Positions 2,403 to 44,689 of a stretch of 44,751 nt of DNA are shown one piece after another. Within the stretch, counting starts at the first letter, position 1. Each line of letters begins with the position of its first letter. This DNA comes from Octopus sinensis (Eukaryota), in assembly GCF_006345805.1 (NCBI RefSeq), contig NW_021834698.1, positions 1 through 44,751 of the forward strand, read 5' to 3'. Both the position numbers and the translations under genes were made by a program. The notes beneath the pieces are model-generated. The model was not told the origin of the DNA. It did not search any database and saw only the letters and a list, made by a program, of their open reading frames with translations.

Positions 2403-2997
2403 AGTTAGTTAGTTAATTTGGCTCAAAAGCAAATAGCAAGGCCATGTAGGGGGACATGGAGTTATGTACAGGGTGGTGTTCATGTAAAGAGTTCAGGCCA
2501 CTTGAGGTCAAGGGAGACTTTGAACCGAGCGGTCGTCGGCATCTTCACCATCTCATCTGGCAGCTTGTTCCACGGATCCGCAACCCGGACGGAGAAAGCC
2601 CCTCTCCTTCGATTGAGATGAAATCGTCGCAGGTAGAGCTTTTCGGAATGACCCCGCAGCCGACGCTCCGGAGCAGGAGTGAAGAACAGCTCTTTTGAGA
2701 GGTTACACTTCCCGCTTATAATGTTGTGAGCAAGAATGAGATCACCACGGCGGCGGCGTTTTTCTAGAGAATAAAGGTCGAGCGTCCTCAGCCTTTCTTC
2801 GTAGGACAAATTTTTGAGACCATGAACCAGGCGGGTAGCCAGCCTCTGGACTCTTTCGAGGTGCTGTATGTCTTTGAGGAGATAAGGAGAAGAGGCTTGA
2901 ATCCCGTACTCCAATATGGGTCTCACCAGCGTGACATAGAGTGGCAGGAATATGGCTGCTGTGAGCACTCCGAATGACCGTCGAATCAAAAACAGAG
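2403..2997 (-). mobile_element. 5'-truncated CR1-clade LINE: ORF2 C-terminus, short 3' UTR, (TAAC)n tail
   Basis: ORF 2480-2989 reads LYVTLVRPILEY...SPYLLKDIQHLERVQRLATR...LSYEERLRTLDLYSLEKRRRRGDLI...RGHSEKL...FSVRV..PWNKLP, the typical CR1 post-RT region; open frame; ends AACTAACTAACT. Confidence 0.92.
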
Positions 2998-3376: not shown

Positions 3377-3636
3377 ATTCTTTTACTCTTTTACTTGTTT
3401 CAGTCATTTGACTGCGGCCATGCTGGAGTACTGGCATTAGGCGAGCAAATCGACCCCTAGGAATTATTCATTGTAAGCCTAGTACTTATTCTATCGGTCT
3501 CTTTGCCGAACCGCTAAGTTACGGGGACGTAAACACACCAGCATCGGTTGTCAAGCGATATTGGGGGGACAAACATAGACACACAAACACACAAACACAC
3601 ACACACACACTCACTCACACACATACACACACACAT

Positions 3637-3669
<33 letters not shown>

Positions 3670-3828
3670 CATATATGACGGGCTTCTTCCAGTTTCCGTC
3701 TACCAAATCCACTAACAAGGCTTTGGTCGGCCCTAGGCTATAGTAGAAGACATTTGCCCAAGGTTCCATGCAGTGGGACTGAACCCAGAACCATGTGGCT
3801 GGTAAGCAAACTACTTACCACGCAGCCA
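3377..3828 (-). mobile_element. SINE family A, full length
   Basis: Same head, microsatellite, body and tail as 481-890. Confidence 0.9.
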
Positions 3829-4890: not shown

Positions 4891-5367
4891 CAGCACTAAG
4901 CTAAACTAAATACCAACTTGTGACCAGTTCAAACATTGCTTGAGGCATTTTCGAACTCGTAAGAATGCCATTCAAGATATTTTGTCACAGAACAAGCAAC
5001 TTGTTTGTAGTTATACTGACATTTTATATTTGAAATTAGGTGTGTGTGTGTGTGTGTGTGGTGAATATAACCAAATTTAAACAGCAGCTGAAATTCACTG
5101 TAAGATGTACACAGTAATGGTAGAATACTTGTTTTATTGAACATAATAAGACTGTGGCTTCGAAGTTTCGCCGACAGCAGCAGTTATATAATCTATGAGC
5201 ACGCATGCGCATAAATTGATATGATAGCTGCTCTCAAATGTCGTTATTGTTCTCGTTGTTGTCGTGATGTCACTTCTAACGAAGCAAACATGTAATCAAC
5301 GGTGTTCCAGCCATGGCCCTCATGCCTTTTTATTTCTAAATAAAATTTGCCCCACACTTCATTATCC

Positions 5368-5758
5368 TATTTCTTTACTAACCACAAGGGGCTAAACACA
5401 GAGGGGACAGACAAACGGATTCAGTCGATTACATCGACCCCAGTGCGTAGCGGGTAGTTAATTTATCGACCCCGAAAGGATAAAAGGCAAAGTCGACCTC
5501 GGTGGAATTTGAACTCAGAACGTAACGGCAGACGAAATACCTATTTCTTTACTACCCACAAGGGGCTAAGCATAGAGAGGACAAACAAGGACAGACAAAC
5601 GGATTAAGTCGATTACATCGACCCCAGTGCGTAACTGGTAGTTAATTAATCGACCCCGAAAGGATGAAAGGCAAAGTCGACCTCGGCGGAATTTGAACTC
5701 AGAACGTAACGGCAGACGAAATACCGCTAAGCATTTCGCCCGGCGTGCTTAACGTTTC
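5368..5758 (-). mobile_element. SINE family B dimer with 9-bp TSD
   Basis: Slightly truncated head plus two units; B box GAGTTCAAATTCC; TCATTATCC at 5359-5367 and 5759-5767. Confidence 0.9.
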
Positions 5759-6078
5759 TCATTATCCAAAGCCTCCGTTTTTTTCTCTTCTCTTTTCAAG
5801 ACAGTAAAATATACTTTTGAAGGAGATTTGGCTATTATTTCTAGCTGATTCAGCGACCATATAGAGGCTTTCTTGTTGACTCTTCTCTTTCCTCCCCCGG
5901 TTTAATTGTTTTTGGTTACTATAGCAACATAGTCAGCTGTCGATGTCGCGTTTTGTCGCATGAGATGACTGGCTGCGTTGGCTGCAGCTGCGACTTGCAC
6001 TTGCCGCTGCAACCGAAGCTGCTGCCTGGCAGTCGGGTATCAAGTTGACAGTCGGGTATCAGTCAGGTTTCGGGGTGT

Positions 6079-8905: not shown

Positions 8906-9120
8906 ACCCAGAAACCATTGGTGCACAGATATTGCTTTGAGCTGAGTGGGGACACTAGCTCCCTTGTTTGAAAATATAAGGAGGCAGATAATGCGTCGAT
9001 AGTCAGCTGGAGATGATGTTTTCCTGGGGTTAAATAACAGTAACACTGGTTCTAATCAGGACTGCCACTTCATCTTGGCAAATAAAGTTTTTATTTGTTT
9101 TACTTTACTTCAGTTCACTC

Positions 9121-9334
9121 TCTTACACTTTTACTCTTTTACTTGTTTCAGTCATTTGACTGCGGCCATGCTGGAGCACCGCCTTTAGTCGAGCAAATCG
9201 ACCCCGGGACTTATTCTTTGTAAGCCCAGTACTTATTCTATCGGTCTCTTTTGCCGAACCGCTAAGTGACGGCGACGTAAACACACCAGCATCGGTTGTC
9301 AAGCAATGCTAGGGGGACAAACACAGACACACAA

Positions 9335-9373
<39 letters not shown>

Positions 9374-9576
9374 ACACCCCACACACATATATATATATAT
9401 ATATATAAATATATACGACAGGCTTCTTTCAGTTTCCGTCTACCAAATCCACTCACAAGGCTTTGGTCGGCCCGAGGCTATAGCAGAAGACACTTGCCCA
9501 AGATGCCACGCAGTGGGACTGAACCCGGAACCATGTGGTTGGTAAGCAAGCTACTTACCACACAGCCACTCCTGCG
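9121..9576 (-). mobile_element. SINE family A, full length, near consensus
   Basis: All modules intact. Confidence 0.92.
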
Positions 9577-9584
9577 TATATTGA

Positions 9585-9805: not shown

Positions 9806-10111
9806 GGAGGCGCAATGGCCCAGTGGTTAGGGCAGCGGACTCGCGGTCGTAGAATCGTGGTTTCGATTCCCAGACCGGGCGCTGTGAGTGTTTATTGAGC
9901 GAAAACACCTAAAAGCTCCACGAGGCTCCGGCAGGGGGTGGTGATCCCTGTTGTACTCTTTCACCACTCTTTCTCCCACTCTTTCGTCTGTTGGCCTGCT
10001 CGCTTAGCCAGCGGGGTGGCGTCATTCGAAGGCTAAAACAATGCGAAGCGCATTGTGACCAGCGATGTGTAACTACATCTGATGGACTGGTCGGTCACGC
10101 GATCACGTGAT
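9806..10111 (+). mobile_element. SINE family D, full length
   Basis: GGAGGCGCAATGGCCCAGTGGTTAGGGC (A box) ... GGTTTCGATTCCC (B box); highly similar second copy at 30292-30595; ends GGTCACGCGATCACGTGAT. Confidence 0.88.
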
Positions 10112-10686
10112 ATATACGAATAGTTATGTACGCGCACGCGCGTGTGTGTGATGGACAGAAGATTGCTGTGTACGAGTGAGCATGCGTCATGTAATAGGCG
10201 TCCATCGTCTACGCAAAGACATTTGCCCAAAATGCTATGCATTGGAATCGCACTCGGGACTCCGTTTCGAAGCGACCTTCTTAAGACTTCTGCCAGTCGA
10301 ATTCCTTAGAATACAGTAGAACCTCGCAGTACGAGTGCTCCCCTTGTACGAGTAATTTGCTGTACGAGCCGAGACTCGTGCTAATTTTTGTCCTGAAATA
10401 CGAGCGGAGATCCGCAGTATTTGCACACAAGGCGGTGTCTCAGCATCTTAAAGAAAATTCAGTTAATAAAACCAGTTTACATATTTCTTTTGCATTCTCC
10501 TTTTTTTTATAATTGTCATTTTACTTGTAATTATACCCTTTCTGTTTTAAAAACCATAAAAAGATATTTTTTGAGTGTTTTTTAGGGACTGGAACGGATT
10601 AAATATATTTTAGTTAATTTCAATCCTTAAAATCCTTAAAAATATTTTAGCCCGAAGGCCGCGGCCATGCTGGGGCACCACCGCTG

Positions 10687-10691
10687 AAAAA
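10687..10691 (-). terminator. Pol III terminator (T5) just downstream of tRNA-Thr
   Basis: TTTTT on minus strand after an 11-nt trailer TCTGTTCCACA. Confidence 0.75.
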
Positions 10692-10702
10692 TGTGGAACA
10701 GA

Positions 10703-10775
10703 AGCCCCCAGTGAGGATCGAACTCACGACCCCTGGTTTACAAGACCAGTGCTCTAGCCACTGAGCTATGGAGGC
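10703..10775 (-). tRNA. tRNA-Thr(TGT): tRNA-Thr, anticodon TGT, intact 73-nt cloverleaf
   Basis: GCCTCCA TA GCTC AGTGGCTA GAGC A CTGGT CTTGTAA ACCAG GGGTC GTGAG TTCGATC CTCAC TGGGGGC T; all stems pair (one G:U); canonical A and B boxes. Confidence 0.95.
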
Positions 10776-11297
10776 AACTGAAAAAAATTGATTCGTAAAA
10801 CAAGTAAATCGTAAGACGAGCTCGGTCATGGAACGAATTAAACTCGTACATCCAACGTATCGCTGCATTTTTGGAATTTTTTTCATGTTATCTTAAAAAC
10901 TTAACAGAAGATTGCGTTTGTCTGGGTGGCAGACATTAGGTTATATTCTAAATGATAATATTTATTCGTTCGTGTTTCTGTTTGGCGAGAAGCCAGACTG
11001 GAAACTAAGATTTAAATCATCATTTCCAGTTCTTCTTCGTCTGGTGAGCAGCACTCGATTAAAATAGTCTTGCACTGATGCCCATTAAGTGATAAGCCGT
11101 CTTTGATTTTCTGGAAGACTGCACTTTCCTTTCTTTGGGATTGTTACAGTTATAGACTTTTACCATTCTTCTGCTGGATCATCTCTAACGATTATTGAAT
11201 TGATAATTGGTAAAAGAAGCTCAGCACAAGAGAACGGAGAATTTTGCCTGGTCCACTAGCTTTTCCACCAAACAATATTACTTATCTCTCTCTAAGA

Positions 11298-11712
11298 GGC
11301 AAGCTGGCAGAAACGTTAGCACGCCGGGCGAAATACGTAGCCGTATTTCGTCTGCCTTTACGTTCTGAGTTCAAATTCCGCCGAGGTCGACTTTGCCTTT
11401 CATCCATTCGGGGTCGATAAATTAAGTACCAGCTACGCACTGGGGTCGATGTAATCGACTAAATACCTTTATCTGTACTTGTTTGTCCCCTCTATGTTTA
11501 GCCCTTTGTGGGTAATAAAGAAATAGGTATTTCGTCTGCCGCTACGTTCTGATTTCAAATTCTGCCGAGGTCGACTTTGTCTTTCATCCTTTCGGGGTCG
11601 ATTAAATAAGGACCAGAAACGCATTGGGGTCGATACAATCGACTTAATCCGTTTGTCTGTTCTTATTTGTCCTCTCTGTGTTTAGCCCCTTGTGGGAAGT
11701 AAAGAAATAGGT
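11298..11712 (+). mobile_element. SINE family B dimer
   Basis: Head GGCAAGCTGGCAGAAACGTTAGC, two units joined at AAAGAAATAG|GTATTTCGTCTG. Confidence 0.9.
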
Positions 11713-11731
11713 ATCATTTATCTCTCTAAGA

Positions 11732-11945
11732 GGCAAGCTGGCAGAATCGTTAGTACGCAGGCGAAATGCTTAGCAGCACTTCGTCCGTCCTTACGTTCTG
11801 GGTTCAAATTCCGCCGAAATTGACTTATCTTTCATCTTTTCGGGGTCGACAAAGTAGGTATCACTTGATTAATGAGGTTGATTTAATCGATTTAGCCCCT
11901 GCCCCTAAACTCCCTTTGTCGTGTCAAATTTTGAAGCCGTTATCA
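11732..11945 (+). mobile_element. SINE family B monomer, diverged, with alternative tail
   Basis: Same head and central domain; tail CCCCTGCCCCTAAACTCCCTTTGTCGTGTCAAATTTTGAAGCCGTTAT. Confidence 0.8.
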
Positions 11946-14107: not shown

Positions 14108-14691
14108 GAAGAGTGGTTACAAATTTTGCCACAAAGGCAGCCATTTTACGGAAGGGGTGAGTCGATTATATCGACCCCAGTGCGTAACTGGTACTTAATT
14201 AATCGACCCCGAAAGGATAAAAGGCAAAGTCGACCTCGGCGGAATTTAAAACTCAGAACGTAAAGACAGACGAAATACCTATTTCTTTACTACCCACAAG
14301 GGGCTAAACACAGAGAGGACAAACAACTACAGACAAACGGATTAAGTCAATTATATCGACCCCAGTGCGAAACTGGTATTTATTTAATCGACTCCGAAAG
14401 GATGAAAGGCAAAGTCGACCACGGCGGAATTTGAACTCGGAACGTAGCGGCAGACGAAATACCTATTTCTTTACTACCCACAGGGGTCTAAACACAGAGA
14501 GGATAAACAATAACAGACAAACGGATTAAGTCAAGTATATCGACCCCAGTGCGAAACTGGTACTTACTTAATCGACCACGAAAAAGGATGAAAGCAAATC
14601 GACCTCGGAGGAATTTGAACTCAGAACGTAACGGCAGACGAAATACCGCTAAGCATTTCGCTCGGCGTGCTAACGTTTCTGTCAGCTCGCC
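14108..14691 (-). mobile_element. SINE family B trimer
   Basis: Full head at 14640-14691, three central-domain units, alternative tail at the left end. Confidence 0.88.
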
Positions 14692-14696
14692 AACAA

Positions 14697-14765
14697 TGAC
14701 GATGATGATGATGATGATGACGACGACGAGACGACGATGATAATGATGATAATGACGATGATGAG
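14697..14765. repeat. (GAT)n/(GAC)n triplet tract
   Basis: Direct reading. Confidence 0.9.
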
Positions 14766-15185: not shown

Positions 15186-15877
15186 GGCTCAAGAGTGGCT
15201 GTGTGTTAAGTAGCTTGCTTACCAACCTCATGGTTCCGGGTTCAGTCCCACTGCGTGTTATCTTGGGCAAGTGTCTTCTGCTATAGTCTTGGGCCGACTA
15301 AAGCCTTGTGAGTGGATTTAGTAGACGGAAACTGAAAGAAGACCGTCGTATATAATGATGTGTGTATGTGTGTGTATTTGTGTCTGTTTGTTCCCCCAAC
15401 ATCGCTTGACAACCGATGTTGGTGTGCTTACGTCCCTGTAACTTAGCGGTTACAGGCAAAAGAAACATAGGCTTCATCATCATCATTGTTCGACCGTGGT
15501 CGAGACAATGGAATTTACATGCTACGCCAGACTTCACGTCCATCCATGGCATTGCGGAGGTCCTGTTGCTCGGATGCCTGTATCTGGAGATTACATCAGG
15601 GTAGGAGAGTGTGCGCCCTCTGGTATTGCGAGTAGATGGCTTCCAGAGGAGAAGAGCAGAAATTACTCGTTTTCAGCTCTACAACAATGTCCAGCAAACT
15701 GGACTCTCTTACCTTTCACAAGAGATGACACAGGTGGTAGTTTCCCATATATTTGCATTTTGGTTGGATGGCGCTTCCACGAGAGATTTTGGCTTACAAA
15801 GAATATGGATGCAGTGCTTCAGCATAGCCGCAGTCAAATTGACTGAAACAAGTAAAAGAATAAAAGAATAAAAGAAT
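15186..15877 (+). mobile_element. SINE family A interrupted by an RTE fragment
   Basis: Head and body 15186-15474, tail 15791-15877 ending (AAAAGAAT)n. Confidence 0.85.
15475..15790 (-). mobile_element. 5'-truncated RTE-clade LINE 3' end with (GAT)n tail and 5-bp TSD
   Basis: Translates NLSWKRHPTKMQIYGKLPPVSSLVKGKRVQFAGHCCR, then LLLWKP...GRTLSYPDVISR...DLRNAMDGREVWRS; GGCTT at 15470-15474 and 15791-15795. Confidence 0.85.
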
Positions 15878-16210
15878 ATAAACGCTTATCTCAACACTAG
15901 CAGAAAAACAAAAACAAAAAAACATTGCATTACAGTGGAACGTTGTGAAGCTTAGCAGAAGTCGTGTTTAGTGCAGCCGAGACAACGACTCGTCCGTCGT
16001 CCACAGCCTGAAGAAGGGAAAAAAGTCAACAAGCTAGCCGTCCATTTTTTCTTTAATCATTTCGTGTGTCGTTACCAATTATTCTACAATTATTCTACAA
16101 AGTTCTTGCATACGGACAAATACCAATTCCCCGTTCATGTGCTCGCGGCAATTCTTTAAAGTTCCTAGTCCTGGCATTAAAATTGCTATTTTAAAAATTT
16201 ATTTTTATCA

Positions 16211-20084: not shown

Positions 20085-20940
20085 CTGCCGGCGCTGCTGC
20101 TGCTGATGCTGCGATTGTTGCTACCAACGCCGTTGTCATGACTACTACTGTTGAAGTTACGATTATTGATATTCCTGTTGTTGTTCTTGTGCTGGCGGTG
20201 GTAGTGGTGGTGATGGTGGTGGTGGTGATGGTGGTGGTGGTGATGGTGGTGGTGGTGGTGGTGGTGGTGGGATGGTGGTGGTGGTGATGGTGGTGGTGGT
20301 GATGGTGGGGTGGTGGTGTCGAGTGGTGATCATGTAGTTGTAGTGGTGGTGATGTTAGTGGTGGTGGTGGTGGTGGTGGTGGTGGTGGTGGGTGAGGTGG
20401 TGGTGGTGGTGTGGTGGTGTGATGGTAGTGGTGGTGGTGGTGGTGGTGGTGGTGTCGAGTGGTGATCATGTAGTTGTTATTGGTGGTGATGTTAGTGGTG
20501 GTGGTGGTGGTGGTGGTGGTGGTGGTGATGGTGGTGGTGGTGGTGGTGGTGATGGTGGTGGTGGTGGTGATGGTGATGGTGGTGGCGATGTTGGATATAA
20601 TGTTGCTGTTGGCGGTGGTGGTGATGTTAGCGATTGTGGTGGTGGTGGTGGTGAGGCTACTGTTGTTGTGGTTGTTGTTGGTGGTGATGGTGGTGATGAT
20701 GATGGTGGTGGCGATTACAGTGATGTTGCTGTTGTTGTTGGTAGTGCTGGTGGTGTTGTTGATGGTGGCGGCGGTGGCGGCGGCGGCGGTGGTGGTGGTG
20801 GTGGCGGTGGCGGCGGTGGTGGTGTTATTGTTATTGTTGTTGGTGGTGAGGTTGTTGTTGTTATTATTGATGGTGGTGGTGGTGGCGGTGGTGGTGGTGG
20901 TGTTGGTGGTGGTGGTGTTGGTGGTGGTGGTGGTGGTGTT
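20085..20940. repeat. About 850-bp (GGT)n-dominated triplet tract with GAT/GTT/GGC variants
   Basis: Direct reading; block GTGTCGAGTGGTGATCATGTAGTTG occurs twice (about 20316 and 20453). Confidence 0.92.
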
Positions 20941-21309
20941 AAACTGCAGACGAGATTAAGACGATTGCGTAGCTGCGATACGCGGTGGAGTGAAGTGTGA
21001 ATTATAGTACGAGTTGTAGTATAGCGCAGTGTAGTACGACGTGATGCAGACGGTGTATGGCACAGCGTAGTCTGTGGCGTAGTGTCCTATACGGCGCGGC
21101 GTGGTGGTGCTGTCTGGTGCGCTGCAGTGTGGCGTAGCGCAACGTTGTCCGCTGATGAAGCGCGCTGGTGTCTAATGCAGTTTAATCTCGTAATGCGTTT
21201 CACGTCTTTTCTCGTCGGGTAAAAAACAATGAAGTCACGTGTGACTGAATTACATCACGTGAAATGTGATCGCAACGGGAGTACAAGTGCCAGGTTAGGC
21301 AGCGTATTG

Positions 21310-24666: not shown

Positions 24667-25083
24667 TTTCACTCTTTTCACTCTTTTACTTGTTTCAGTC
24701 ATTCGACTGCGGCCATGCTGGAGCACCGCCTTTAATCGAGCAACTCGACCCCGGACTTATTCTTTGTAAGCCCAGTACTTATTCTATCGGTCTGTTTTGC
24801 CGAACCGCTAAGTAACGGGGACATAAACACACCAGCATCGGTTGTCAAGCAATGCTAGGGGGACAAACACGGACACACAAACACACACATATACATATAT
24901 ATATATATATACATATATACGACGGGCTTCTTTCAGTTTCCGTCTACCAAATCCACTCACAAGGCTTTGGTCGGCCCGAGGCTATTGTAGAAGACACTTG
25001 CCCAAGGTGCCACGCAGTGGGAAATGAACCCGGAACCATGTGGTTGGTAAACAAGCTACTTACCACACAGCCACTCCTGCGCC
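24667..25083 (-). mobile_element. SINE family A, full length, near consensus
   Basis: All modules intact. Confidence 0.92.
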
Positions 25084-28332: not shown

Positions 28333-28700
28333 CAGGATGCGTAAGATATTTGAGGACAGATTTATGTTTATAAAAAATAAAACATATATAATAACAGATA
28401 ATAACTTTGTTTATCAAAAAATGCTGAGGATAAAAATAGACCTTCTTTACAATAAAGCCACCTTCAGCTTCAACAACGGCTTCTGTTTGAGATCTAAATC
28501 CTCTACATGCTCAAATCAAGTGGCCCTGGTTCATTTTGGACATTACTCTGACTATGGCAGCTTTCAAAGAATCTTTGGTGTTTTGGGCGTGTTCATTGAC
28601 CTCTCTTTCTCAATAACACTCCACATGTAATAGTCCAATGGATTGAGATCTGGGGAATTAGGAGGTCAAATATTAGGGGTTATGTGATCATGAAAATTTT
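28333..28700 (-). mobile_element. Tc1/mariner-superfamily (maT/DD37D-like) transposon 3' end
   Basis: Minus strand ENFHDHITPNI*PPNSPDLNPLDYYMWSVIE...NTKDSLKAAIVRVM...EAVVEAEGGFI; TIR TA|CAGGATGCG at 28331-28341. Confidence 0.85.
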
Positions 28701-29939
28701 CAGGATGGTGTTTATACCATTTGTCAGCGGTTTTGATCTTATAATGCCGACATATTGTCCAATGTTAACACTGGCCGACTCTGTCATGTTTCGCTTTGTA
28801 TTCTACAGGTGCTAAGACTCTACACCCTGAGATTAGGTAGTCTACTGTTTCAATCTCATCGTTACAGAATCGGCATTTTGGGTCAGCTCCATTTTTTATC
28901 ACATTGGCTTGGTAGTTCCGGCTTGATAAGCTTTGGTCTTGAGCAGCTAATATGAAACCTTCACTCTCCACTTTCAGCCCTGAGTTTCGTAACCATTGAT
29001 GCGTGTGTTTCTGGTCGACATCAGCTTGTTTGCTACGGGCCACATACTTGCCATGGAGAGGTTTCTGTTCCCATCTGCTAGTTAATTTTTCATGTTCTTT
29101 TGTCTTTGCAATTAATTTTATATTCTTTGCAGCAGCAGTTGGCGCATTTCCTTCAGCCTGATTAATCTGGTAAGTATCTAAGAGATCAGTAGCGAATTTT
29201 TTGCTCTCTTTCAGAATAGAGTGAAGTTTATTCGGTCTTTCATGTTTTTCAACAAGTTTTAGCATCCAGTCGTTGGTTGCTTCAAGGTATTTGGCCAGTC
29301 CGATTGTGGTGGTTTTGTATGTAAGTTCAAGCTGGATCAAACCTCGACCTCCCTGAGCTCTGGGAAGGTAAAGGCGATCCACGTCTGCCTTTGATGGTGC
29401 ATCTTATTACAAGTCAGTAGCTTGCGGATTTTTCGGTCAATTTTCATTATTTCACTGGTATTCCAGTTAAGCACATTGAAGCTATAAAGAACAACTGGTA
29501 CTGCTAAGGAATTTATGGCTAACACCTTATTATATGCATTCAGCTCAGACTTCAGGACTGCTTGAACTCTTCTATAACATTTCTTCCTAACCTTCTTTTT
29601 CATGCTTGCATGCTGGATACCAGAGCCTTCATTTATTCCTAGGTATTTATAGGTTTGTTCCTGCTCAAGTTCCTTTATTACTATTTCGACATCTAATTCG
29701 ATTGAACTTGACTTTACCAATTTCCCTTTCTTAAAAGTGGCTTTGGCACACTTTTCAAGGCCAAACTCCATCCTTTCACAGTATGTAGTAGTCCTTCAAG
29801 CCCTTCATCAACTTTGCCATATAGTTTTAAATCATCCATATAAAATAGATGGTTTATTTTCCTGTTGTCCATTTTGTAACCATACCTTGTTCTATTCAGT
29901 TCACTTGAGAGTGGTATTAGTGCTACGCAGAAAATTAGT
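28698..29939 (-). mobile_element. Decayed R4/Dong-clade LINE: RT domains and CCHC knuckle, frameshifted
   Basis: HLFYMDDLKLYG; FGLEKCA; YKYLGI; DRLYLPRAQGGRGL; EGFILAAQDQ; CRFC..EIETVDYLISGC; three ORF pieces in the track. Confidence 0.9.
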
Positions 29940-30293: not shown

Positions 30294-30595
30294 AGGCGCA
30301 ATGGCCAAGTGGTTAGGGCAGCGGACTCGCGGTCGTAGGATCGCGGTTTCGATTCCCAGACCGGGCGTTGTGAGTGTTTATTGAGCAAAAACACCTAAAA
30401 GCTCTACAACGCTCCGGCAGGGTGTGGTGATCCCTGCTGTACTCTTTCACCACTCTTTCTCTCACTCTTTCTTCTGTTGGCCTGCTCGCTGAGCCAGCGG
30501 GGTGGCGTCATTCGAAGGCTAAAACAATGCGAACGCATTGTGACCAGCGATGTGTAACGACATGTGATGGTCTGGTCGGTCACGTGATCACATGA
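30292..30595 (+). mobile_element. SINE family D, full length
   Basis: Highly similar to 9806-10111; directly follows (TG)n. Confidence 0.88.
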
Positions 30596-30751
30596 TAATT
30601 TGAAACTGACTTATTGGAAGTCCACCTGAAGATTGTCGATCAAGACAAGAAACAATTGTAGTGACGGTTTTTTTGACTATTTATTAAAATTTTATGTATT
30701 GATTAAGTCTTTCCTTGTTTGTTTTGCAAAATAGTGGTTTTGTCTCTAATA

Positions 30752-30989: not shown

Positions 30990-32419
30990 ACACCGGTTTA
31001 CGTAAACCTGACATTGTTGTGGTGAATAAAAAAGAAAAAGAAAAGAAAGCATCCATGATAATCGAGATAGCACGTTTCGGTGACAACAGGGTCAAAGAGA
31101 AAGTGAACAACGATAAATTCGGGGTTTTTTTTCCTACTCTAGGCCCGAAATTTTTGGGGAGGTGGGGCCAGTCGATTAGATCGACCCGGTACGCAACTGG
31201 TACTTAATTTATCGACACAGAAAGGATGAAAGGCAAAGTCGACCTCGGCGGAATTTGAAGTCAGAACGTAAAGACAGACGAAATACCTATTTCTTTACTA
31301 CCCACAAGGGGCTAAACACAGAGAGGACAAACAAGAACAGACAAACAGATTAAGTCGATTATATCGATCCCAGTGCGTAACTGGTACTTATTTAATCAAC
31401 CCCGAAAGGATGAAAGGCAAAGTTGACATCGGCAGAATTTGAACTCAGAACGTAACGGCAGATGAAATACCCCGAAGCATTTCGCCCGGCGTGCTAACGT
31501 TCTTATTTCTTTATTGCCCACAGGGGGCTAAACACAGAGAGAACAAACAAGGATAGACAAACAGATTAAGTCGATTACATCGACCCCAGTGCGTAACTGG
31601 TACTTATTTAATCGACCCCGAAAGGATGAAAGGCAAAGTCGACCTCGGTGGAATTTGAACTCAGAACTTAACGGCAGACGAAATACTTATTTCTTTACTA
31701 CCCACAAGGGGCTAATCACAGAGGGGACAAACAAGGACAGACACATGGATCAAGTCGATTGCATCGACCCCAGTACGCAACTGGTACTTAATTTATCGAC
31801 CCCGAAAGGATGAAAGGCAAAGTCGACCTCGGCGGAATTTTAACTCAGAGCGTAAAGACGGACGAAATACTGTTAAGTATTTCGCCCGGCATGCCAGCTC
31901 GCCGCCTTAAACAACAACGATATTTTTTTTTCTACTCTAAGCATAAGGCTCGAAATTTTTTTTGTGGTGTGGGCGCCAGTCGATTAGAACAAAACCAGTA
32001 CGCAACTGGTATTTAATTTATCGACTCCGAAAGGATGAAAGGCAAAGTCGACCTCGGCGGAATTTGAACTCAGAACGTAGCGGCAGACGAATTTCGCCCG
32101 GCGTTCTAACGTTTCTGCCAGCTCAGCGCCTGAACAACAACGATAAATTGAAGTGGGCAATGAAGGAGTGGATGTGAGGGCGATAGTAATTCGCTCGCTT
32201 GGAAGTATCAGCACTCAACGACCGACATGGCTCGAAAAGATTGGAACAAATGCAAAGACAGAACACCTACAAAAATCATCATTGCTTGGAACGGCAAGAA
32301 TTCTTTTGCAGGGTTCTTAAAGTACGATCAGTAAACAAGTGTCACCTTAGTCTGCTGGCCGTGAACGGCTGACGCTTTTCATCATACCCAGTAAAAGAAG
32401 CTGAGAGTTTTCATCCAAA
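30990..32419 (+). mobile_element. Decayed R4/Dong-type LINE 3' end (restriction-like endonuclease), split by SINE B cluster
   Basis: RKPDIVVVNKKEK..SMIIEIARFGDNRVKEK before the SINEs; AIVIRSLGSIS...WLEKIG...LQKSSLLGTARIL after them; PD-(D/E)xK-type RLE C-terminus. Confidence 0.8.
31125..32131 (-). mobile_element. Cluster of three stacked SINE family B elements (dimer, dimer, monomer)
   Basis: Heads end at about 31500, 31908 and 32131; target AACAACGATA at 31106, 31913 and 32136. Confidence 0.88.
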
Positions 32420-33462: not shown

Positions 33463-33550
33463 TTTTTTTTACTTGCTTCAGTCAAGCAAAAGATTGCGGC
33501 CATGCTGGGGCACCATCTTGAAGAATTTTTAGTTGCATGAATCGTTATCG
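33463..33550 (-). mobile_element. SINE family A tail fragment
   Basis: TTTTACTTGCTTCAGTC...GCGGCCATGCTGGGGCACC. Confidence 0.7.
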
Positions 33551-33557
33551 GGCTATC

Positions 33558-33700
33558 GGAAAAAATACTATCACAAGGTTAGTACAATGGTCCAATAGTA
33601 TAGAAGTCGTTGACTGGTTTAAAGCCATTAAGAATAAGAATAAAGCGAGATTCACGCAATTCGGATAGCATTTTTTTCGATGGCCCGATAACTGAAGAGA
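33558..33700 (+). mobile_element. Decayed Penelope-like element RT fragment
   Basis: VQWSNSIEVVDWFKAIKNKNKARFTQF then FDGPITEE, resembling the PLE RT motif QWxNTxxVIxWF...FIQFDIxxFYPSITE (recalled). Confidence 0.65.
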
Positions 33701-35466: not shown

Positions 35467-35611
35467 ATAGGTAGGTAGGTAGGTAGGTAGGTAGGTAGGT
35501 AGGTAGGTATGGAGGGAGGGAGGCAGACAGGCAGGTAGGTAGGTAGCTGATCCTTCGAACTGATAGACATAGCTAAAAAATCTGCCTCGTCATATCCTAC
35601 AGTCCAAAATA

Positions 35612-36030
35612 TATTTCTTTACTGCCCACAAGGGGCTAAACACAGAGGGGACAAACAAGGACAGACGAAGGGATTGAGTCGATTACATCGCCCCCAGTGC
35701 GAAACTGGTACTTTATTTATCGACCCCGAAAGGATGAAAGGCAAAGTTGACCTCGGCGGAATTTGAACTCAGAACGTAACGACAGACGAAATACCTATTT
35801 CTATTTCTTTATTACCCACAAGGGGCTAAACATAGAGGTGACAAACATGGACAGACATAGGTATTAAGTCGATTATATCGACCCCAGTGCGTAACTGGTA
35901 CTTAATTTATCGACCCCGAAAGGATGAAAGGCAAAGTCGATCTCGGCGGAATTTGAACTCGGAACGTAAAGACGGACGAAATACCGCTAAGCATTTCACC
36001 CGGCGCGCTAACGACTCTGCCAGCTCGCTG
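35612..36030 (-). mobile_element. SINE family B dimer with 14-16-bp TSD
   Basis: CCTACAGTCCAAAATA at 35596-35611 and 36031-36046. Confidence 0.92.
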
Positions 36031-36871
36031 CCTACAGTCCAAAATAAGGAAACGACACATCAAGATAATACAGTATTTCATTTATTCGCTGCCCATAAAA
36101 GGAATCCTTGCTGTTTACAGCTCGGCTTTTTATTACAGGTTTCTTCGGTCACAGTTGACCTACAACCAAACAGCAACAACAGACAAAGCAACATGTCCCT
36201 TCCTGCTTGCGCTCCTAACCTCAAAAATAAGAAATAATTATAAACCAGCCCAGTAGAACTCGGTTATTTTCTGTTGATCCCCACCGCGGGAGGTCAATAG
36301 ACTCTGCCTTTCCATCTGTGACTAACACATAAAATAAATCCTAAAGAGGTGATTATTTTTTCACGACAGCATTATCTAAACAATGCGAAAAACTACGTAG
36401 AAATATTTCTCTTTAAAAATAAAAATTGTTCTAGTTTCACTTAGGTTTTATTATCATCGCCTATTCTACTCTCCAATACACATTTTTATGTGGCAGAGGG
36501 GCGGGACAAAGGCGGTGCATCTGTGCTCAACTGATCAGTCAGTTTGTATATTTGTATCCTGGTTTTTCATTACTCTTTTTGTTAACGTGACTTTACGTAG
36601 CTTTTATACTGTTAGAGCATGCGCAGTATGGCCGAATGGTTAAGTTATTTTCGAAAAACGTAATTATAAATATTGAAGCAAAATATTTTTCTGATGACAT
36701 CTTAATGAGTTTTAGAGCAAAAATACATATAATATGTAATCAAGATGCACGCTTGGGTTTATGTGAAATCCAGGTTTTCCCGGAAGACCACATTTAAGTG
36801 CCTCCAAGAAGTATGCAGTTTTAAGGCCATAGATCCCCGCCCCTTGGTTTACATTCTCTCTTTCGAACCTT

Positions 36872-40883: not shown

Positions 40884-41155
40884 GCAAAGTCGACTTCGGC
40901 GGAATTTGAACCCAGAATGTAACGGCAGACGAAATACGGCCACGCATTTCGCCCGGCGTGCTAACGTTTCTGCCAACTCGCCACCTTAATTAATTACATA
41001 TTCTTTTCTACTCTAGAACCAAGGCCCGAAAATTTGGGGGAGAGGGCCAGCGATTAGATCGACCCCAGTAAGCAACTGGTACTTAATTTATCGACCCTGA
41101 AAAGATGAAAGGCAAAGTCGACCTCGGTGGAATTTGAACTCAGCACGTACAGACG
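40881..41155 (-). mobile_element. Two partial SINE family B elements
   Basis: 40881-40986 is a head plus B box, cut by (TA)n; 41001-41155 is a tail plus central domain without head. Confidence 0.85.
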
Positions 41156-41167
41156 ACGTCCTAAAGA

Positions 41168-44100
41168 TTCTTTTCTACTCAAGAAACAAGGCCCGAAAAT
41201 TTTGGGGAGGGGGGCCAGTCGATTAGATTGATCCCAGTGCATAACTGGTACTTAATTTATCGACCCTGAAAGGATAAAAAGCAAAGTGGACCTCGGCGAA
41301 ATTTGAACTCAGAACGTAACAGCAGACGAAATACCTATTTCTTTATTACCCACAAGGGGCTAAACACAGAGAGGACAAACAAGGACAGACACACGGATTA
41401 AGTCGATTATATCGATCCCAGTACATAACTGGTACTTATTTAATCGACCCTGAAAGGATAAAAAGCAAAGTGGACCTCGGCGAAATTTGAACTCAGAACG
41501 TAACAGCAGACGAAATACCTATTTCTTTATTACCCACAGGGCTAAACACAGAGAGGACAAACAAGGACAGACACACGATTAAGTCGATTATATCGATCCC
41601 AGTACATAACTGGTACTTATTTAATCGACCCTGAAGGATAAAAGCAAGTGGACCTCGGCGAAATTTGAACTCAGAACGTAACAGCAGACGAAATACCTAT
41701 TTCTTTATTACCCACAAGGGGCTAAACACAGAGAGGACAAACAAGGACAGACACACGGATTAAGTCGATTATATCGATCCCAGTACATAACTGGTACTTA
41801 TTTAATCGACCCTGAAAGGATAAAAAGCAAAGTGGACCTCGGCGAAATTTGAACTCAGAACGTAACAGCAGACGAAATACCTATTTCTTTATTACCCACA
41901 AGGGGCTAAACACAGAGAGGACAAACAAGGACAGACACACGGATTAAGTCGATTATATCGATCCCAGTACATAACTGGTACTTATTTAATCGACCCTGAA
42001 AGGATAAAAAGCAAAGTGGACCTCGGCGAAATTTGAACTCAGAACGTAACAGCAGACGAAATACCTATTTCTTTATTACCCACAAGGGGCTAAACACAGA
42101 GAGGACAAACAAGGACAGACACACGGATTAAGTCGATTATATCGATCCCAGTACATAAATGGTACTTATTAATCGACCCTGAAAGGATTTAAAAGCAAAG
42201 TGGACCTCGGCGAAATTTGAACTCAGAACGTAACAGCAGACGAAATACCTATTTCTTTATTACCCACAAGGGGCTAAACACAGAGAGGACAAACAAGGAC
42301 AGACACACGGATTAAGTCGATTATATCGATCCCAGTACATAACTGGTACTTATTTAATCGACCCTGAAAGGATAAAAAGCAAAGTGGACCTCGGCGAAAT
42401 TTGAACTCAGAACGTAACAGAGCGAACGAAATACCTATTTCTTTATTACCCACAAGGGGCTTAAACACAGAGAGGACAAACAAGGACAGACACACGGATT
42501 AAGTCGATATATCGATCCCAGTACATTAACGGGTACTATTTAATCGACCCTGAAAGGATATAAAAAGCAAAGTGGACCTCGGCGAAATTTGAACTCAGAA
42601 CGTAACAGCAGACGAAATACCTATTTCTTTATTACCCACAAGGGGCTAAACACAGAGAGGACAAACAAGGACAGAACACGGATTAAGTCGATTATATCGA
42701 TCCCAGTACATAACGGTACTTATTAATCGACCCTGAAAGGATTAAAAAGCAAAGTGGACCTCGGCGAAATTTGAACTCAGAACGTAACAGCAGACGAAAT
42801 ACCTATTTCTTTATTACCCACAAGGGGCTAAACACAGAGAGGACAAACAAGGACAGACACACGGATTAAGTCGATTATATCGATCCCAGTACATAACTGG
42901 TACTTATTTAATCGACCCTGAAAGGATAAAAAGCAAAGTGGACCTCGGCGAAATTTGGAACTCAGAACGTAACAGCAGACGAAATACCTATTTCTTTATT
43001 ACCCACAAGGGGTTAAACACAGAGAGGACAAACAAGGACAGACAAACGGATTAAGTCGATTATATCGACCCCCAGTAACATAACTGGTCTTATTTAATCG
43101 ACCCTGAAGGATAAAAAGCAAAGTGGACTCGGCGAAATTTGAATCAGAACGTAACAGCAGACGAAATACCTATTTCTTATTACCCACAAGGGGTTAAACA
43201 CAGAGAGGACAAACAAGGACAGACAAACGGATTAAGTCGATTATATCGACCCCAGTACATAACTGGTACTTATTTAATCGACCCTGAAAGGATAAAAAGC
43301 AAAGTGGACCTCGGCGAAATTTGAACTCAGAACGTAACAGCAGACGAAATACCTATTTCTTTTACCCACAAGGGGTTAAACACAGAGAGGACAAACAAGG
43401 ACAGACAAACGGATTAAGTCGATTATATCGATCCCAGTACATAACTGGTACTTATTTAATCGACCCTGAAAGGATAAAAAGCAAAGTGGACCTCGGCGAA
43501 ATTTGAACTCAGAACGTAACAGCAGACGAAATACCTATTTCTTTATTAACCAAGGGGTTAAACACAGAGAGGACAAACAAGGACAGACAAACGGATGAAA
43601 TTCGTCGATTATATCGACCCCAGTACATAACTGGTACTTATTAATCGACCCTGAAAGGATAAAAAGCAAAGTGGACCTCGGCGAAATTTGGAACTCAGAA
43701 CCGTAACAGCAGACGAAATACCTATTCTTTATTACCCAGGGGTTAAACACAGAGAGGACAAACAAGGACAGAAAAACGGATTAAGTCGATTATATCGATC
43801 CCAGTACATAACTGGTACTATTTAATCGACCCTGAAAGGATAAAAAGCAAAGTGGACCTCGGCGAAATTTGAACTCAGAACGTAACAGCAGACGAAATAC
43901 CTATTCTTTATTACCCACAAGGGGTTAAACACAGAGAGGACAAACAAGGACAGACACACGGATTAAGTCGATTATATCGATCCCAGTACATAATGGTAAT
44001 TATTTAATCGACCATGAAAGGATAAAAAGCCAAGTGGACCTCGGCGAAATTGAACTCAGAACGTAACAGCAGACGAAATACCTATTTCTTTATTACCCAC

Positions 44101-44315
44101 AAGGGGTTTTAACACAGGAGAGGACAAACAAGGACAGACAAACGGATTAAGTCGATTATATCGATCCCAGTGCGTAACTGGTACTTATTTAATCGACTCC
44201 GAAAGGATAAAAAGCAAAGTGGACCTCGGCGAAATTTGAACTCAGAATGTACAGACAGACGAAATCGTGCTAAGCATCTCGCCCAGCATGCTAACGTTTC
44301 TGCCAGCTCACCGCC
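41168..44315 (-). repeat. SINE-B-derived tandem array, about 17 units of 184 bp, bounded by one SINE head and one SINE tail
   Basis: Marker GC(A)AAGTGGAC recurs 17 times from 41281 to 44214 at 179-188-bp spacing (mode 184); head ...GCCAGCTCACCGCC at 44315; tail TTCTTTTCTACTC at 41168. Confidence 0.95.
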
Positions 44316-44689
44316 TTAATATGAATGTTTACTGCCATTACATTGAACGTGGGTCGGTTTAGTTCGGCTGTGGACGTATTTCAGTTTGAGAGGAAACGGC
44401 ATTTCACTGGACTACACAGGAATACGGTGTCCGGTCGTCTGTTGTCTTTCGAGAATTTATCGATATCTTTGTTTGTTTTGTGAATCAGCGTTTCATAGAT
44501 ACGGAGATTATCGGTGTTTGAATAGAAGTGATTGGTAATTGGTAACCGGTGTTCAATAATCGTAAAATGATTAATTGGGAAGGAAAGGAAAGAGGAAAGC
44601 AGGGGGGGGAAGAAGTGAAGTGAGTGAGAATGAAAGAGTGTGAAGGAAAATGAAGGAATCAGAGACAAAAGAAAAGGAGGCAAAAGGAA

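What the first reader, a model, noticed from the sequence alone, without database searches (positions are those of the whole stretch)
10623..10780. An intact tRNA-Thr gene fused to a retroposon tail and inserted inside a MITE: a candidate mobile tRNA cassette
Seen, minus strand: about 5-nt leader, perfect tRNA-Thr(TGT), 11-nt trailer, TTTTT, then CAGCGGTGGTGCCCCAGCATGGCCGC-GGCC-TTCG-GGCT-AAAATATTTTTAAGG-ATTTTAAGG. The 19-mer GGTGCCCCAGCATGGCCGC is identical to older SINE A tails in this window (about 12260 and 33497). The next hairpin keeps its position but changes sequence (AGTC-AAAT-GACT becomes GGCC-TTCG-GGCT, a cUUCGg tetraloop). The cassette ends in short tandem repeats, as RTE-mobilised elements do, and it interrupts a Tigger-like MITE, so it arrived after the MITE. 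Inference: a whole pre-tRNA transcript was retroposed with an RTE-recognised tail, by read-through or by template switching as in U6-L1 chimeras. Unlike a SINE it keeps its terminator and could still yield mature tRNA, which would be a route for tRNA gene amplification. No clear TSD was seen.
Basis: partly seen in the sequence, partly recalled or inferred. Interest (0 to 1): 0.82.

Follow-up and report, generated by a model that had tools for sequence, protein, structure and literature searches.

The report
tRNA-Thr gene abutting a LINE tail
An intact threonine tRNA gene in an octopod genome is followed directly by a short piece of a retrotransposon 3' tail; this is most likely a one-off chimeric retrocopy (a failed "proto-SINE"), and no second copy could be sought because the host genome was out of reach.

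Summary
The sequence facts are right. A canonical tRNA-Thr(UGU) lies at 10703-10775 (minus), followed by an 11-nt trailer, T5, and then a retroposon tail module: two adjacent hairpins and a 9-nt tandem repeat. The same module ends 15 other elements in the window and a reverse-transcriptase-encoding LINE in Argonauta hians, so it is LINE-type; RTE affiliation was not shown. The cassette's tail variant, with a cUUCGg second hairpin, is unique in the window. The cassette sits between two diverged inverted-repeat arms (p about 0.007) whose left end reads TA|CAGTAGAACC, consistent with an old MITE. No convincing target-site duplication exists; three weak candidates point to three different histories.

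Best reading (about 0.45): one retroposition event in which the LINE reverse transcriptase switched from a tail-bearing RNA to a 3'-unprocessed pre-tRNA. This is the known U6/L1-type chimera and SINE-birth route. The retained terminator blocks SINE-like spread.

Main rival (about 0.22): a resident tRNA gene with a 5'-truncated tail inserted beside it; two comparably short tail pieces occur in this window.

The idea of a recurrent mobile tRNA cassette is untested, because no octopod genome could be searched. If real, this is a new member of a known kind, of moderate interest.

The parts
10703..10775 (-). tRNA-Thr(UGU) gene with a canonical cloverleaf; A box TAGCTCAGTGG and B box GTTCGATCC are intact
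   Evidence: ARAGORN; Rfam 68.9 bits; one base different from tRNA-Thr genes of two other eukaryote assemblies; cloverleaf minimum-free-energy fold
10776..10789 (-). 14 nt between the right inverted-repeat arm and the tRNA: AATTTTTTTCAGTT. This is a T-run followed by a CA initiator-like dinucleotide at -5/-4. If the unit is a retrocopy, the leader would be about AGTT.
   Evidence: read directly; a similar TTT.CA.GT lies upstream of the tRNA-Thr gene in L122
10692..10702 (-). 3' trailer TCTGTTCCACA with no CCA, so the sequence is gene-type or pre-tRNA-type, not mature tRNA
   Evidence: read directly
10687..10691 (-). T5 run. It would act as a Pol III terminator and is the junction with the tail. 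It also aligns with the ATTCTTCA segment of one SINE-tail subfamily (7 of 8), so its origin, tRNA unit or tail, is ambiguous.
10661..10684 (-). Tail hairpin A: GCGGU.GUGC-CCCA-GCAU.GCCGC. It contains the 19-mer GGTGCCCCAGCATGGCCGC.
   Evidence: exact 19-mer shared with 12261 and 33496; fold; pair counts; model R1 scores 52 bits over 10644-10688
10649..10660 (-). Tail hairpin B: GGCC-UUCG-GGCU, a variant unique in the window. It occupies the position of AGUC-AAAU-GACU in the SINE tails.
10599..10648 (-). A/T-rich 3' end of the tail, with ATTTTTAAGG ATTTTAAGG (9-nt period, 2.2 copies at 10622-10641) and a second CTAAAATAT.TTTAA copy. The true 3' terminus lies somewhere in 10599-10623.
   Evidence: TRF; direct repeat D6
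10314..10407 (+). Left arm of the MITE-like inverted repeat. Its terminus is TA|CAGTAGAACCTCGCAGTACGAG, and it holds four TACGAG motifs.
10790..10866 (-). Right arm of the inverted repeat, about 75% identical to the left arm over the aligned core. The outer 15-30 nt are degenerate.
10408..10598 (.). A/T-rich stretch between the left arm and the tail, presumed MITE interior. It has no other copy in the window.
   Evidence: self-BLAST

Best explanation
I read this as a single chimeric retrocopy made by a tail-specific (stringent-type) octopod LINE reverse transcriptase.

Inferred sequence of events:
1. Reverse transcription started on the 3' tail of a LINE or SINE RNA, at the two hairpins and short terminal repeats.
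2. It copied about 85-95 nt.
3. It then switched template to the oligo-U 3' end of a 3'-unprocessed pre-tRNA-Thr and copied that RNA to or near its 5' end.
4. The product integrated inside an old pogo/Tc1-type MITE.

The result is a tRNA-Thr(UGU) gene that keeps its internal A and B boxes and its own trailer and T5 terminator. It can probably still be transcribed and yield tRNA. The terminator keeps the tail out of the Pol III transcript, so the unit cannot spread as a SINE. It is a dead-end proto-SINE, most likely a one-off.

Shown directly: the anatomy of the cassette, the homology and structure of the tail, the LINE association of the tail, and the inverted-repeat context.

Inferred only: the template switch, the single-event origin, and expression.
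For: - The tRNA is canonical and undecayed.
- The trailer and T-run are retained and there is no CCA, so the template was a primary transcript or a gene, not mature tRNA.
- The tail begins within 0-3 nt of the T-run, exactly where a Pol III transcript ends, and it is in the same orientation as the tRNA.
- From the window's own density of tails (16 in 44.7 kb, 3 of them short), the chance of a same-orientation tail 5' end falling within 15 bp of the terminator is about 0.0005-0.003 per tRNA gene.
- The tail is a bona fide reverse-transcriptase recognition-type module. Both hairpins are kept, one with a compensatory change. The module also ends a reverse-transcriptase-encoding LINE in Argonauta hians. 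The cassette shares its CGGTGGT 5' strand, and hence a longer outer stem, with that LINE rather than with the window's SINEs.
- The cassette lies between diverged inverted-repeat arms (about 75% identity, p about 0.007). A resident tRNA gene cannot lie inside a single MITE unless it arrived later or was cargo.
- Both the tRNA and the tail look younger than the arms.
- The same mechanism is documented for U6/L1 and tRNA/L1 chimeras (10.1101/2025.02.02.635956) and is proposed for SINE birth (PittSINE, PMC5729268).
Against: - No convincing target-site duplication brackets the whole unit. The best candidate is TTTCAGTT against TTCCAGTC, 6 of 8.
- A slightly better repeat brackets the tail alone (TCTGTTCCA against TCCGTTCCA, 8 of 9). 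An exact 8-mer, TTTTTCAG, brackets the tRNA alone (p about 0.02).
- The T5 run may belong to the tail, since it matches ATTCTTCA of a SINE-tail subfamily at 7 of 8. That would remove the argument that the junction sits at the RNA 3' end.
- The MITE rests on one diverged pair of arms with no second copy for comparison.
- Short truncated tail-only insertions exist nearby.
- No second copy, empty site or orthologous locus could be examined.
Confidence: 0.45

Rival explanations
1. A resident tRNA-Thr gene with an ordinary 5'-truncated LINE or SINE tail of about 95 nt (10599-10693) inserted independently into its 3' flank, 9 nt after the tRNA. The insertion duplicated TCYGTTCCA and, by accident, supplied a nearby T5 terminator. 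The two 'MITE arms' would then be separate fragments or a chance similarity.
For: - The best-matching direct repeat (TCTGTTCCA at 10702-10694 against TCCGTTCCA at 10598-10590, 8 of 9) brackets exactly the segment where tail homology begins.
- The segment ATTTTTCA aligns 7 of 8 with ATTCTTCA of the e12261-type tails.
- Tail-bearing elements are very dense, 16 in 44.7 kb, and two others are short tail-only pieces at 15806-15880 and 33467-33560.
- The upstream TTT.CA.GT and the ACATTTT trailer resemble the flanks of a native tRNA-Thr gene in another assembly, L122.
Against: - The 8-of-9 repeat is not significant on its own (p about 0.2-0.25).
- It would leave the original gene with no T-run for about 40 nt, which is unusual.
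- Chance adjacency in the same orientation is about 0.0005-0.003 per gene.
- It does not explain how a resident tRNA gene comes to lie between the two inverted-repeat arms.
Confidence: 0.22
2. A retrocopy of the pre-tRNA alone (TT + tRNA + trailer + U-run, about 90 nt) inserted into a T-rich site at the 5' edge of a truncated LINE tail that was already sitting in the MITE. The target duplication would be TTTTTCAG.
For: - The exact 8-mer TTTTTCAG occurs at 10785-10778 and at 10691-10684, bracketing the tRNA and trailer. The longest shared word has p about 0.02.
- Once the tRNA is removed, the upstream CGAATCAATTTTTTTCA aligns 13 of 17 with CGACTAAAATTTCTTCA, which precedes the 19-mer in e12261.
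Against: - That alignment is not significant in an unconstrained test (p 0.48).
- Two independent retro-insertions would be needed within 10 bp of each other.
- A bare pre-tRNA lacks the tail that a stringent-type reverse transcriptase needs, and an oligo-U 3' end cannot prime on the usual T-rich nick (established TPRT model).
- A leader of UU would not begin at a purine start site.
Confidence: 0.1
3. The tRNA-plus-tail is cargo of the MITE family itself. It would be present in many or all copies and spread by DNA transposition using a pogo/Tc1-type transposase.
For: The cassette lies wholly between the arms. Cargo cannot be told from a later insertion with one copy.
Against: - The tRNA and tail look far less decayed than the arms.
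- There is no second copy of the element in 44.7 kb.
- I know of no precedent for tRNA-carrying pogo-type MITEs (my own knowledge).
Confidence: 0.08

Closest known systems
U6/L1 and tRNA/L1 chimeric retrocopies formed by LINE reverse-transcriptase template switching
   Same: A small Pol III RNA sits at the 5' side, in sense orientation, joined to a 5'-truncated LINE 3' end. The junction is at the U-run of the small RNA, as in U6/L1 chimeras.
   Different: - The primate tRNA/L1 chimeras are mostly half-tRNAs in antisense orientation and have 9-19-bp target-site duplications (10.1101/2025.02.02.635956).
- Here the tRNA is full length, in sense, and carries its trailer.
- The partner is a hairpin-tailed (stringent-type) mollusc LINE, not the poly(A) L1.
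- No target-site duplication is seen.
De novo SINE birth by fusion of a tRNA with a LINE tail (PittSINE/TguSINE1 with a CR1 tail, PMC5729268; Okada-Ohshima model)
   Same: A tRNA head with A and B boxes is joined to a LINE-derived tail bearing a hairpin and a short terminal repeat. Template switching is the proposed origin.
   Different: - A real SINE has no terminator between head and tail and is multicopy.
- Here a T5 run separates them, and only one copy is known.
- The head is still a perfect tRNA rather than a diverged tRNA-like promoter.
The window's own roughly 450-nt octopod SINE and its relatives (the e12261 type)
   Same: They share the tail module: the 19-mer is exact or one base off, and the two hairpins are in the same places.
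   Different: - The cassette lacks the whole SINE body.
- It has a different second hairpin (cUUCGg), a longer outer stem, and a different terminal repeat (ATTTTAAGG rather than AGTAAAAG).
Argonauta hians non-LTR retrotransposon at L124:600-4070
   Same: Its 3' end carries the same module, CGGTGGTCCACCAGCATGACCGC-AGCCGGCTGGGT-TGAAAC. This includes the CGGTGGT strand that the cassette has and the SINEs lack.
   Different: - Identity to the cassette over the 45-nt core is about 69%.
- It comes from a different species.
- It is not shown to be the partner LINE of the window's genome.

Membership tests
LINE-mediated chimeric retrocopy (U6/L1 type) | The 5' part is a complete small Pol III RNA, in sense orientation, ending at its transcript 3' end (U-run) | tested here: met
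   Full tRNA-Thr, then an 11-nt trailer and T5, then the tail, all on the minus strand. Caveat: the T-run may belong to the tail.
LINE-mediated chimeric retrocopy (U6/L1 type) | The 3' part is a 5'-truncated 3' end of a LINE or SINE, including its terminus | tested here: met
   Model R1 scores the cassette tail at 52 bits. The same module ends SINEs in the window and a LINE in A. hians.
LINE-mediated chimeric retrocopy (U6/L1 type) | One pair of target-site duplications brackets the whole chimera | tested here: inconclusive
   Only a 6-of-8 candidate exists. Rival repeats bracket the tail alone or the tRNA alone.
LINE-mediated chimeric retrocopy (U6/L1 type) | An empty site exists, in a paralogous MITE copy or at the orthologous locus | not testable with these tools
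   There is no second MITE copy in the window, and no octopod genome is searchable by DNA.
tRNA-derived SINE | A tRNA-related head with A and B boxes joined to a LINE-related tail | tested here: met
tRNA-derived SINE | Head and tail are co-transcribed by Pol III, with no terminator between them | tested here: not met
   TTTTT lies at 10687-10691, between the trailer and the tail.
tRNA-derived SINE | A dispersed multicopy family | tested here: inconclusive
   The cassette is unique in the window. No junction was found in protein-ORF proxies. The host genome was not available.
Functional nuclear tRNA-Thr gene | Cloverleaf, anticodon, A and B boxes, and a downstream T-run | tested here: met
   Expression is not testable here.
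Tc1/mariner-pogo type MITE ('Tigger-like') | Terminal inverted repeats flanked by a TA duplication | tested here: inconclusive
   The arms are significant (p about 0.007) and the left end reads TA|CAGTAG. The right terminus is degenerate, so the second TA cannot be located.
Tc1/mariner-pogo type MITE ('Tigger-like') | A multicopy family related to a pogo/Tigger transposon | tested here: inconclusive
   No other copy was found in 44.7 kb. The genome was not available.
RTE-mobilised retroposon | The 3' tail is shared with an RTE-clade LINE | tested here: inconclusive
   The only LINE seen with this tail has RVT_1 and a zf-RVT-like C-terminal region. Its clade was not resolved, and no RTE reference was available.
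RTE-mobilised retroposon | Insertion signature: the target-site duplication starts with T about 10 nt downstream of a T-stretch (PMC6007223) | tested here: inconclusive
   A T7 stretch lies 6-12 nt upstream of the tRNA, but no target-site duplication can be fixed.

The most novel reading that the evidence does not exclude
The junction is not unique. An octopod hairpin-tailed LINE repeatedly captures 3'-unprocessed pre-tRNAs by template switching. Because the captured unit keeps its internal promoter and its own terminator, each event would plant a working tRNA gene at a new place. That would be a retroposition route for dispersing and amplifying tRNA genes, visible as many tRNA isotypes sharing this cUUCGg tail variant.
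Probability: 0.08. Interest if true: 0.75.

Novelty: new member of a known kind. Interest (0 to 1): 0.38.

Why it matters
If this is a single-event chimera, it is a clean invertebrate example of the step that creates SINEs: a tRNA transcript joined to a LINE tail by reverse-transcriptase template switching. It would be caught with the tRNA still perfect, and it would show why most such events go nowhere, because the retained terminator stops the tail from being transcribed. It would also show that retroposition can seed a potentially functional tRNA gene copy at a new site. If it is only a truncated tail that landed beside a resident tRNA gene, it is an ordinary feature of a repeat-dense genome.

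Tried and rejected
- ORF proxy for other copies. A 79-aa ORF runs through the upstream flank, the tRNA and the tail. It found only plain tRNA-Thr ORFs from other eukaryotes, none with the tail. A 36-aa junction peptide searched against 1.84 billion representative proteins matched only in its tRNA part. None of the window's ORFs is in the protein collection.\n- DNA pattern scans. The cUUCGg tail variant gave 0 hits in metagenome contigs and in viral contigs. The tRNA-gap-tail junction gave 0 hits in genome contigs. The bare 19-mer gave 120 metagenome hits and 1 viral hit, all GC-rich bacterial coding sequence, which are chance matches.\n- Literature search for the tail sequence found nothing. 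The octopus genome papers I checked gave nothing useful on tRNA genes or on this SINE.\n- Test of whether the flank upstream of the tRNA is continuous with SINE or LINE body sequence: not significant.\n- Attempt to read typical target-site duplications from four full-length SINE copies, to calibrate expectations. The copies are too old and nothing was clear.\n- The idea that the SINE heads are tRNA-Thr relatives is rejected. No tRNA-like Rfam match appears at E<=1 outside the cassette.\n- Identifying the organism through the reverse-transcriptase ORF failed: the best hit had 58% identity, and the named hits were cnidarian. A SINE-derived ORF did identify an octopod relative, Argonauta hians.

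Full report
**What is there**

The window is repeat-dense eukaryotic DNA with microsatellites, a 184-bp satellite and many SINEs.

- ARAGORN finds a single tRNA, tRNA-Thr(tgt), at 10703-10775 on the minus strand.
- Rfam's tRNA model scores it 68.9 bits against a gathering score of 29. No other tRNA-like match appears even at E<=1.
- The gene differs at one D-loop base from tRNA-Thr(TGT) genes fetched from two unrelated eukaryote assemblies. It folds as a cloverleaf. It is therefore a canonical gene sequence, not a decayed SINE head.

Reading the minus strand, the order is:

| Feature | Sequence | Coordinates |
|---|---|---|
| T-rich upstream with CA at -5/-4 | AATTTTTTTCAGTT | 10789-10776 |
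| tRNA-Thr | | 10775-10703 |
| Trailer, no CCA | TCTGTTCCACA | 10702-10692 |
| T5 run | TTTTT | 10691-10687 |
| Spacer | CAG | 10686-10684 (its G is also the first base of hairpin A) |
| Hairpin A | GCGGTGGTGCCCCAGCATGGCCGC | 10684-10661 |
| Hairpin B | GGCC-TTCG-GGCT | 10660-10649 |
| A/T-rich end, 2.2 copies of a 9-nt unit | | repeat at 10622-10641 |

**What the tail is**

- The 19-mer has 13 matches with up to 3 mismatches in the window, against 0 expected.
- Most matches terminate a roughly 450-nt SINE with an internal TA/TG microsatellite. This SINE is present as more than 20 copies or fragments.
- Aligning the tails shows two adjacent hairpins at fixed positions. Hairpin B is paired in 92% of cells, and its one compensatory change (U-A to C-G) comes from the cassette.
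- A covariance model of the module finds 16 copies in the window. The cassette scores 52 bits.
- The cassette's hairpin-B variant and its terminal repeat occur nowhere else in the window.

A SINE-derived ORF found just two relatives, one Logan contig and a hypothetical protein of the octopod Argonauta hians. The A. hians locus carries the SINE head at 88% identity. The window is therefore from an octopod.

In the same A. hians locus, a non-LTR retrotransposon with RVT_1 and zf-RVT-like ORFs ends in the same module: CGGTGGTCCACCAGCATGACCGC-AGCCGGCTGGGT-TGAAAC, scoring 47.6 bits. The module is therefore LINE-type. The cassette shares the CGGTGGT strand, which lengthens the outer stem, with this LINE rather than with the SINEs. 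A homologous LINE fragment lies at 28771-29938 in the window. Nothing I could run assigns this LINE to the RTE clade.

**Context**

- The cassette lies between inverted-repeat arms, with a core at 10345-10391 against 10800-10850. The score exceeds about 99% of shuffles and of random window pieces.
- By eye the arms extend to 10314-10407 and 10790-10866, with repeated TACGA(G) motifs.
- The left terminus reads TA|CAGTAGAACCTCG. The right terminus is degenerate.
- There is no second copy in the window.
- The arms are only about 75% alike, whereas the tRNA and the tail module look undecayed.

**Target-site duplications**

None is convincing. There are three candidates:

| Candidate | Sequences and coordinates | Brackets | Strength |
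|---|---|---|---|
| (i) | TTTTTCAG at 10785-10778 and 10691-10684 | the tRNA and trailer only | exact 8-mer, p about 0.02 |
| (ii) | TCTGTTCCA at 10702-10694 against TCCGTTCCA at 10598-10590 | the tail only | 8 of 9, p about 0.2-0.25 |
| (iii) | TTTCAGTT at 10783-10776 against TTCCAGTC at 10594-10587 | the whole unit | 6 of 8 |

The T5 run also aligns 7 of 8 with ATTCTTCA of one SINE-tail subfamily. It is therefore unclear whether the terminator came with the tRNA or with the tail.

**Weighing the hypotheses**

- *Chimera (favoured, about 0.45).* The arrangement is a full small Pol III RNA, its U-run, then a truncated LINE tail in the same orientation. This is what reverse-transcriptase template switching predicts. 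That mechanism is documented for U6/L1 and, rarely, tRNA/L1 chimeras, and it is the proposed origin of new SINEs such as PittSINE.
  - From the window's own density of tails, a same-orientation tail 5' end within 15 bp of a given terminator has a chance of about 0.0005-0.003.
  - A resident tRNA gene also cannot sit inside a single MITE unless it arrived later.
- *Resident tRNA gene with a truncated tail inserted beside it (about 0.22).* Two other short tail-only pieces lie in this window. This rival also owns the best-matching repeat and a plausible homology for the T-run.
- *Retrocopy of the pre-tRNA alone (about 0.1).* This needs two insertions within 10 bp and an unusual priming step.
- *MITE cargo (about 0.08).* This cannot be excluded with a single copy.

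**Limits**

I could not search an octopod genome.

- Pattern scans of the metagenome, viral and prokaryote-genome collections found nothing relevant.
- ORF-proxy searches found only plain tRNA-Thr loci.
- The window's ORFs are absent from the protein collection.

These negatives say nothing about copy number in the host genome.

**Verdict**

If it is a chimera, it is a new member of a known kind: a LINE-mediated small-RNA chimera, or proto-SINE, blocked by its own terminator. It is of moderate interest until a genome-wide count is made.

Noticed in passing
window 5306-5789, 11287-11890, 14153-14711, 31162-32091, 35560-36049, 41041-44332: A 184-bp satellite occurs in several arrays on both strands; the longest is about 3.3 kb at the window's end. 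The unit contains GGGGTCGA...TCGAC hairpin-like pieces that recall the SINE body, so it may be SINE-derived.
   Followed up: no
window, e.g. 480-890, 3380-3828, 9110-9580, 24671-25081 (all minus): A very abundant SINE of about 450 nt with an internal (TA)n(TG)n microsatellite, present as more than 20 copies or fragments in 44.7 kb. Its head gives no Rfam tRNA match at E<=1. The antisense frame of the head is often open and was annotated as a 'hypothetical protein' in Argonauta hians.
   Followed up: partly
L124:600-4070 (Argonauta hians BAAFZT010000006.1): A non-LTR retrotransposon with frameshifted RVT_1 and zf-RVT-like ORFs. Its 3' UTR ends in the same two-hairpin tail module as the window's SINEs, making it a candidate partner-LINE family for octopod SINEs.
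   Followed up: partly
window 28771-29938 (minus) and 28440-28745: A LINE reverse-transcriptase and C-terminal fragment homologous to the A. hians element. It appears to be cut off at about 28765. By eye, the sequence that follows looks like the C-terminal remnant of a mariner-type transposase; no family search was run on it.
   Followed up: no
window 2480-2989 (minus), then 2213-2430: A 169-aa ORF that, by eye, resembles the C-terminal region of CR1/L2-type LINE ORF2; it has no Pfam hit. It is followed by a long (GTA/GGT)n trinucleotide array rather than the hairpin tail, so this is a second LINE family with a different 3' end.
   Followed up: no
L122:1579-1700 (ENA ERZ25074796, unidentified eukaryote): A tRNA-Thr(TGT) gene whose flanks resemble those in the window: TTTGCAAGT upstream, and a trailer starting TCT and ending ACATTTT. 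This could reflect shared promoter and terminator context of this tRNA family, or a related host.
   Followed up: partly
window 10000-10112 and 30486-30597: A 113-nt repeat at 94% identity, unrelated to the SINE. It was not identified.
   Followed up: no
window 20160-21000: A long GGT/GAT/GGA-type trinucleotide array with strong GC skew (+0.56 in the 20-22 kb bin). It produces spurious Gly/Val-rich ORFs of about 200 aa.
   Followed up: no
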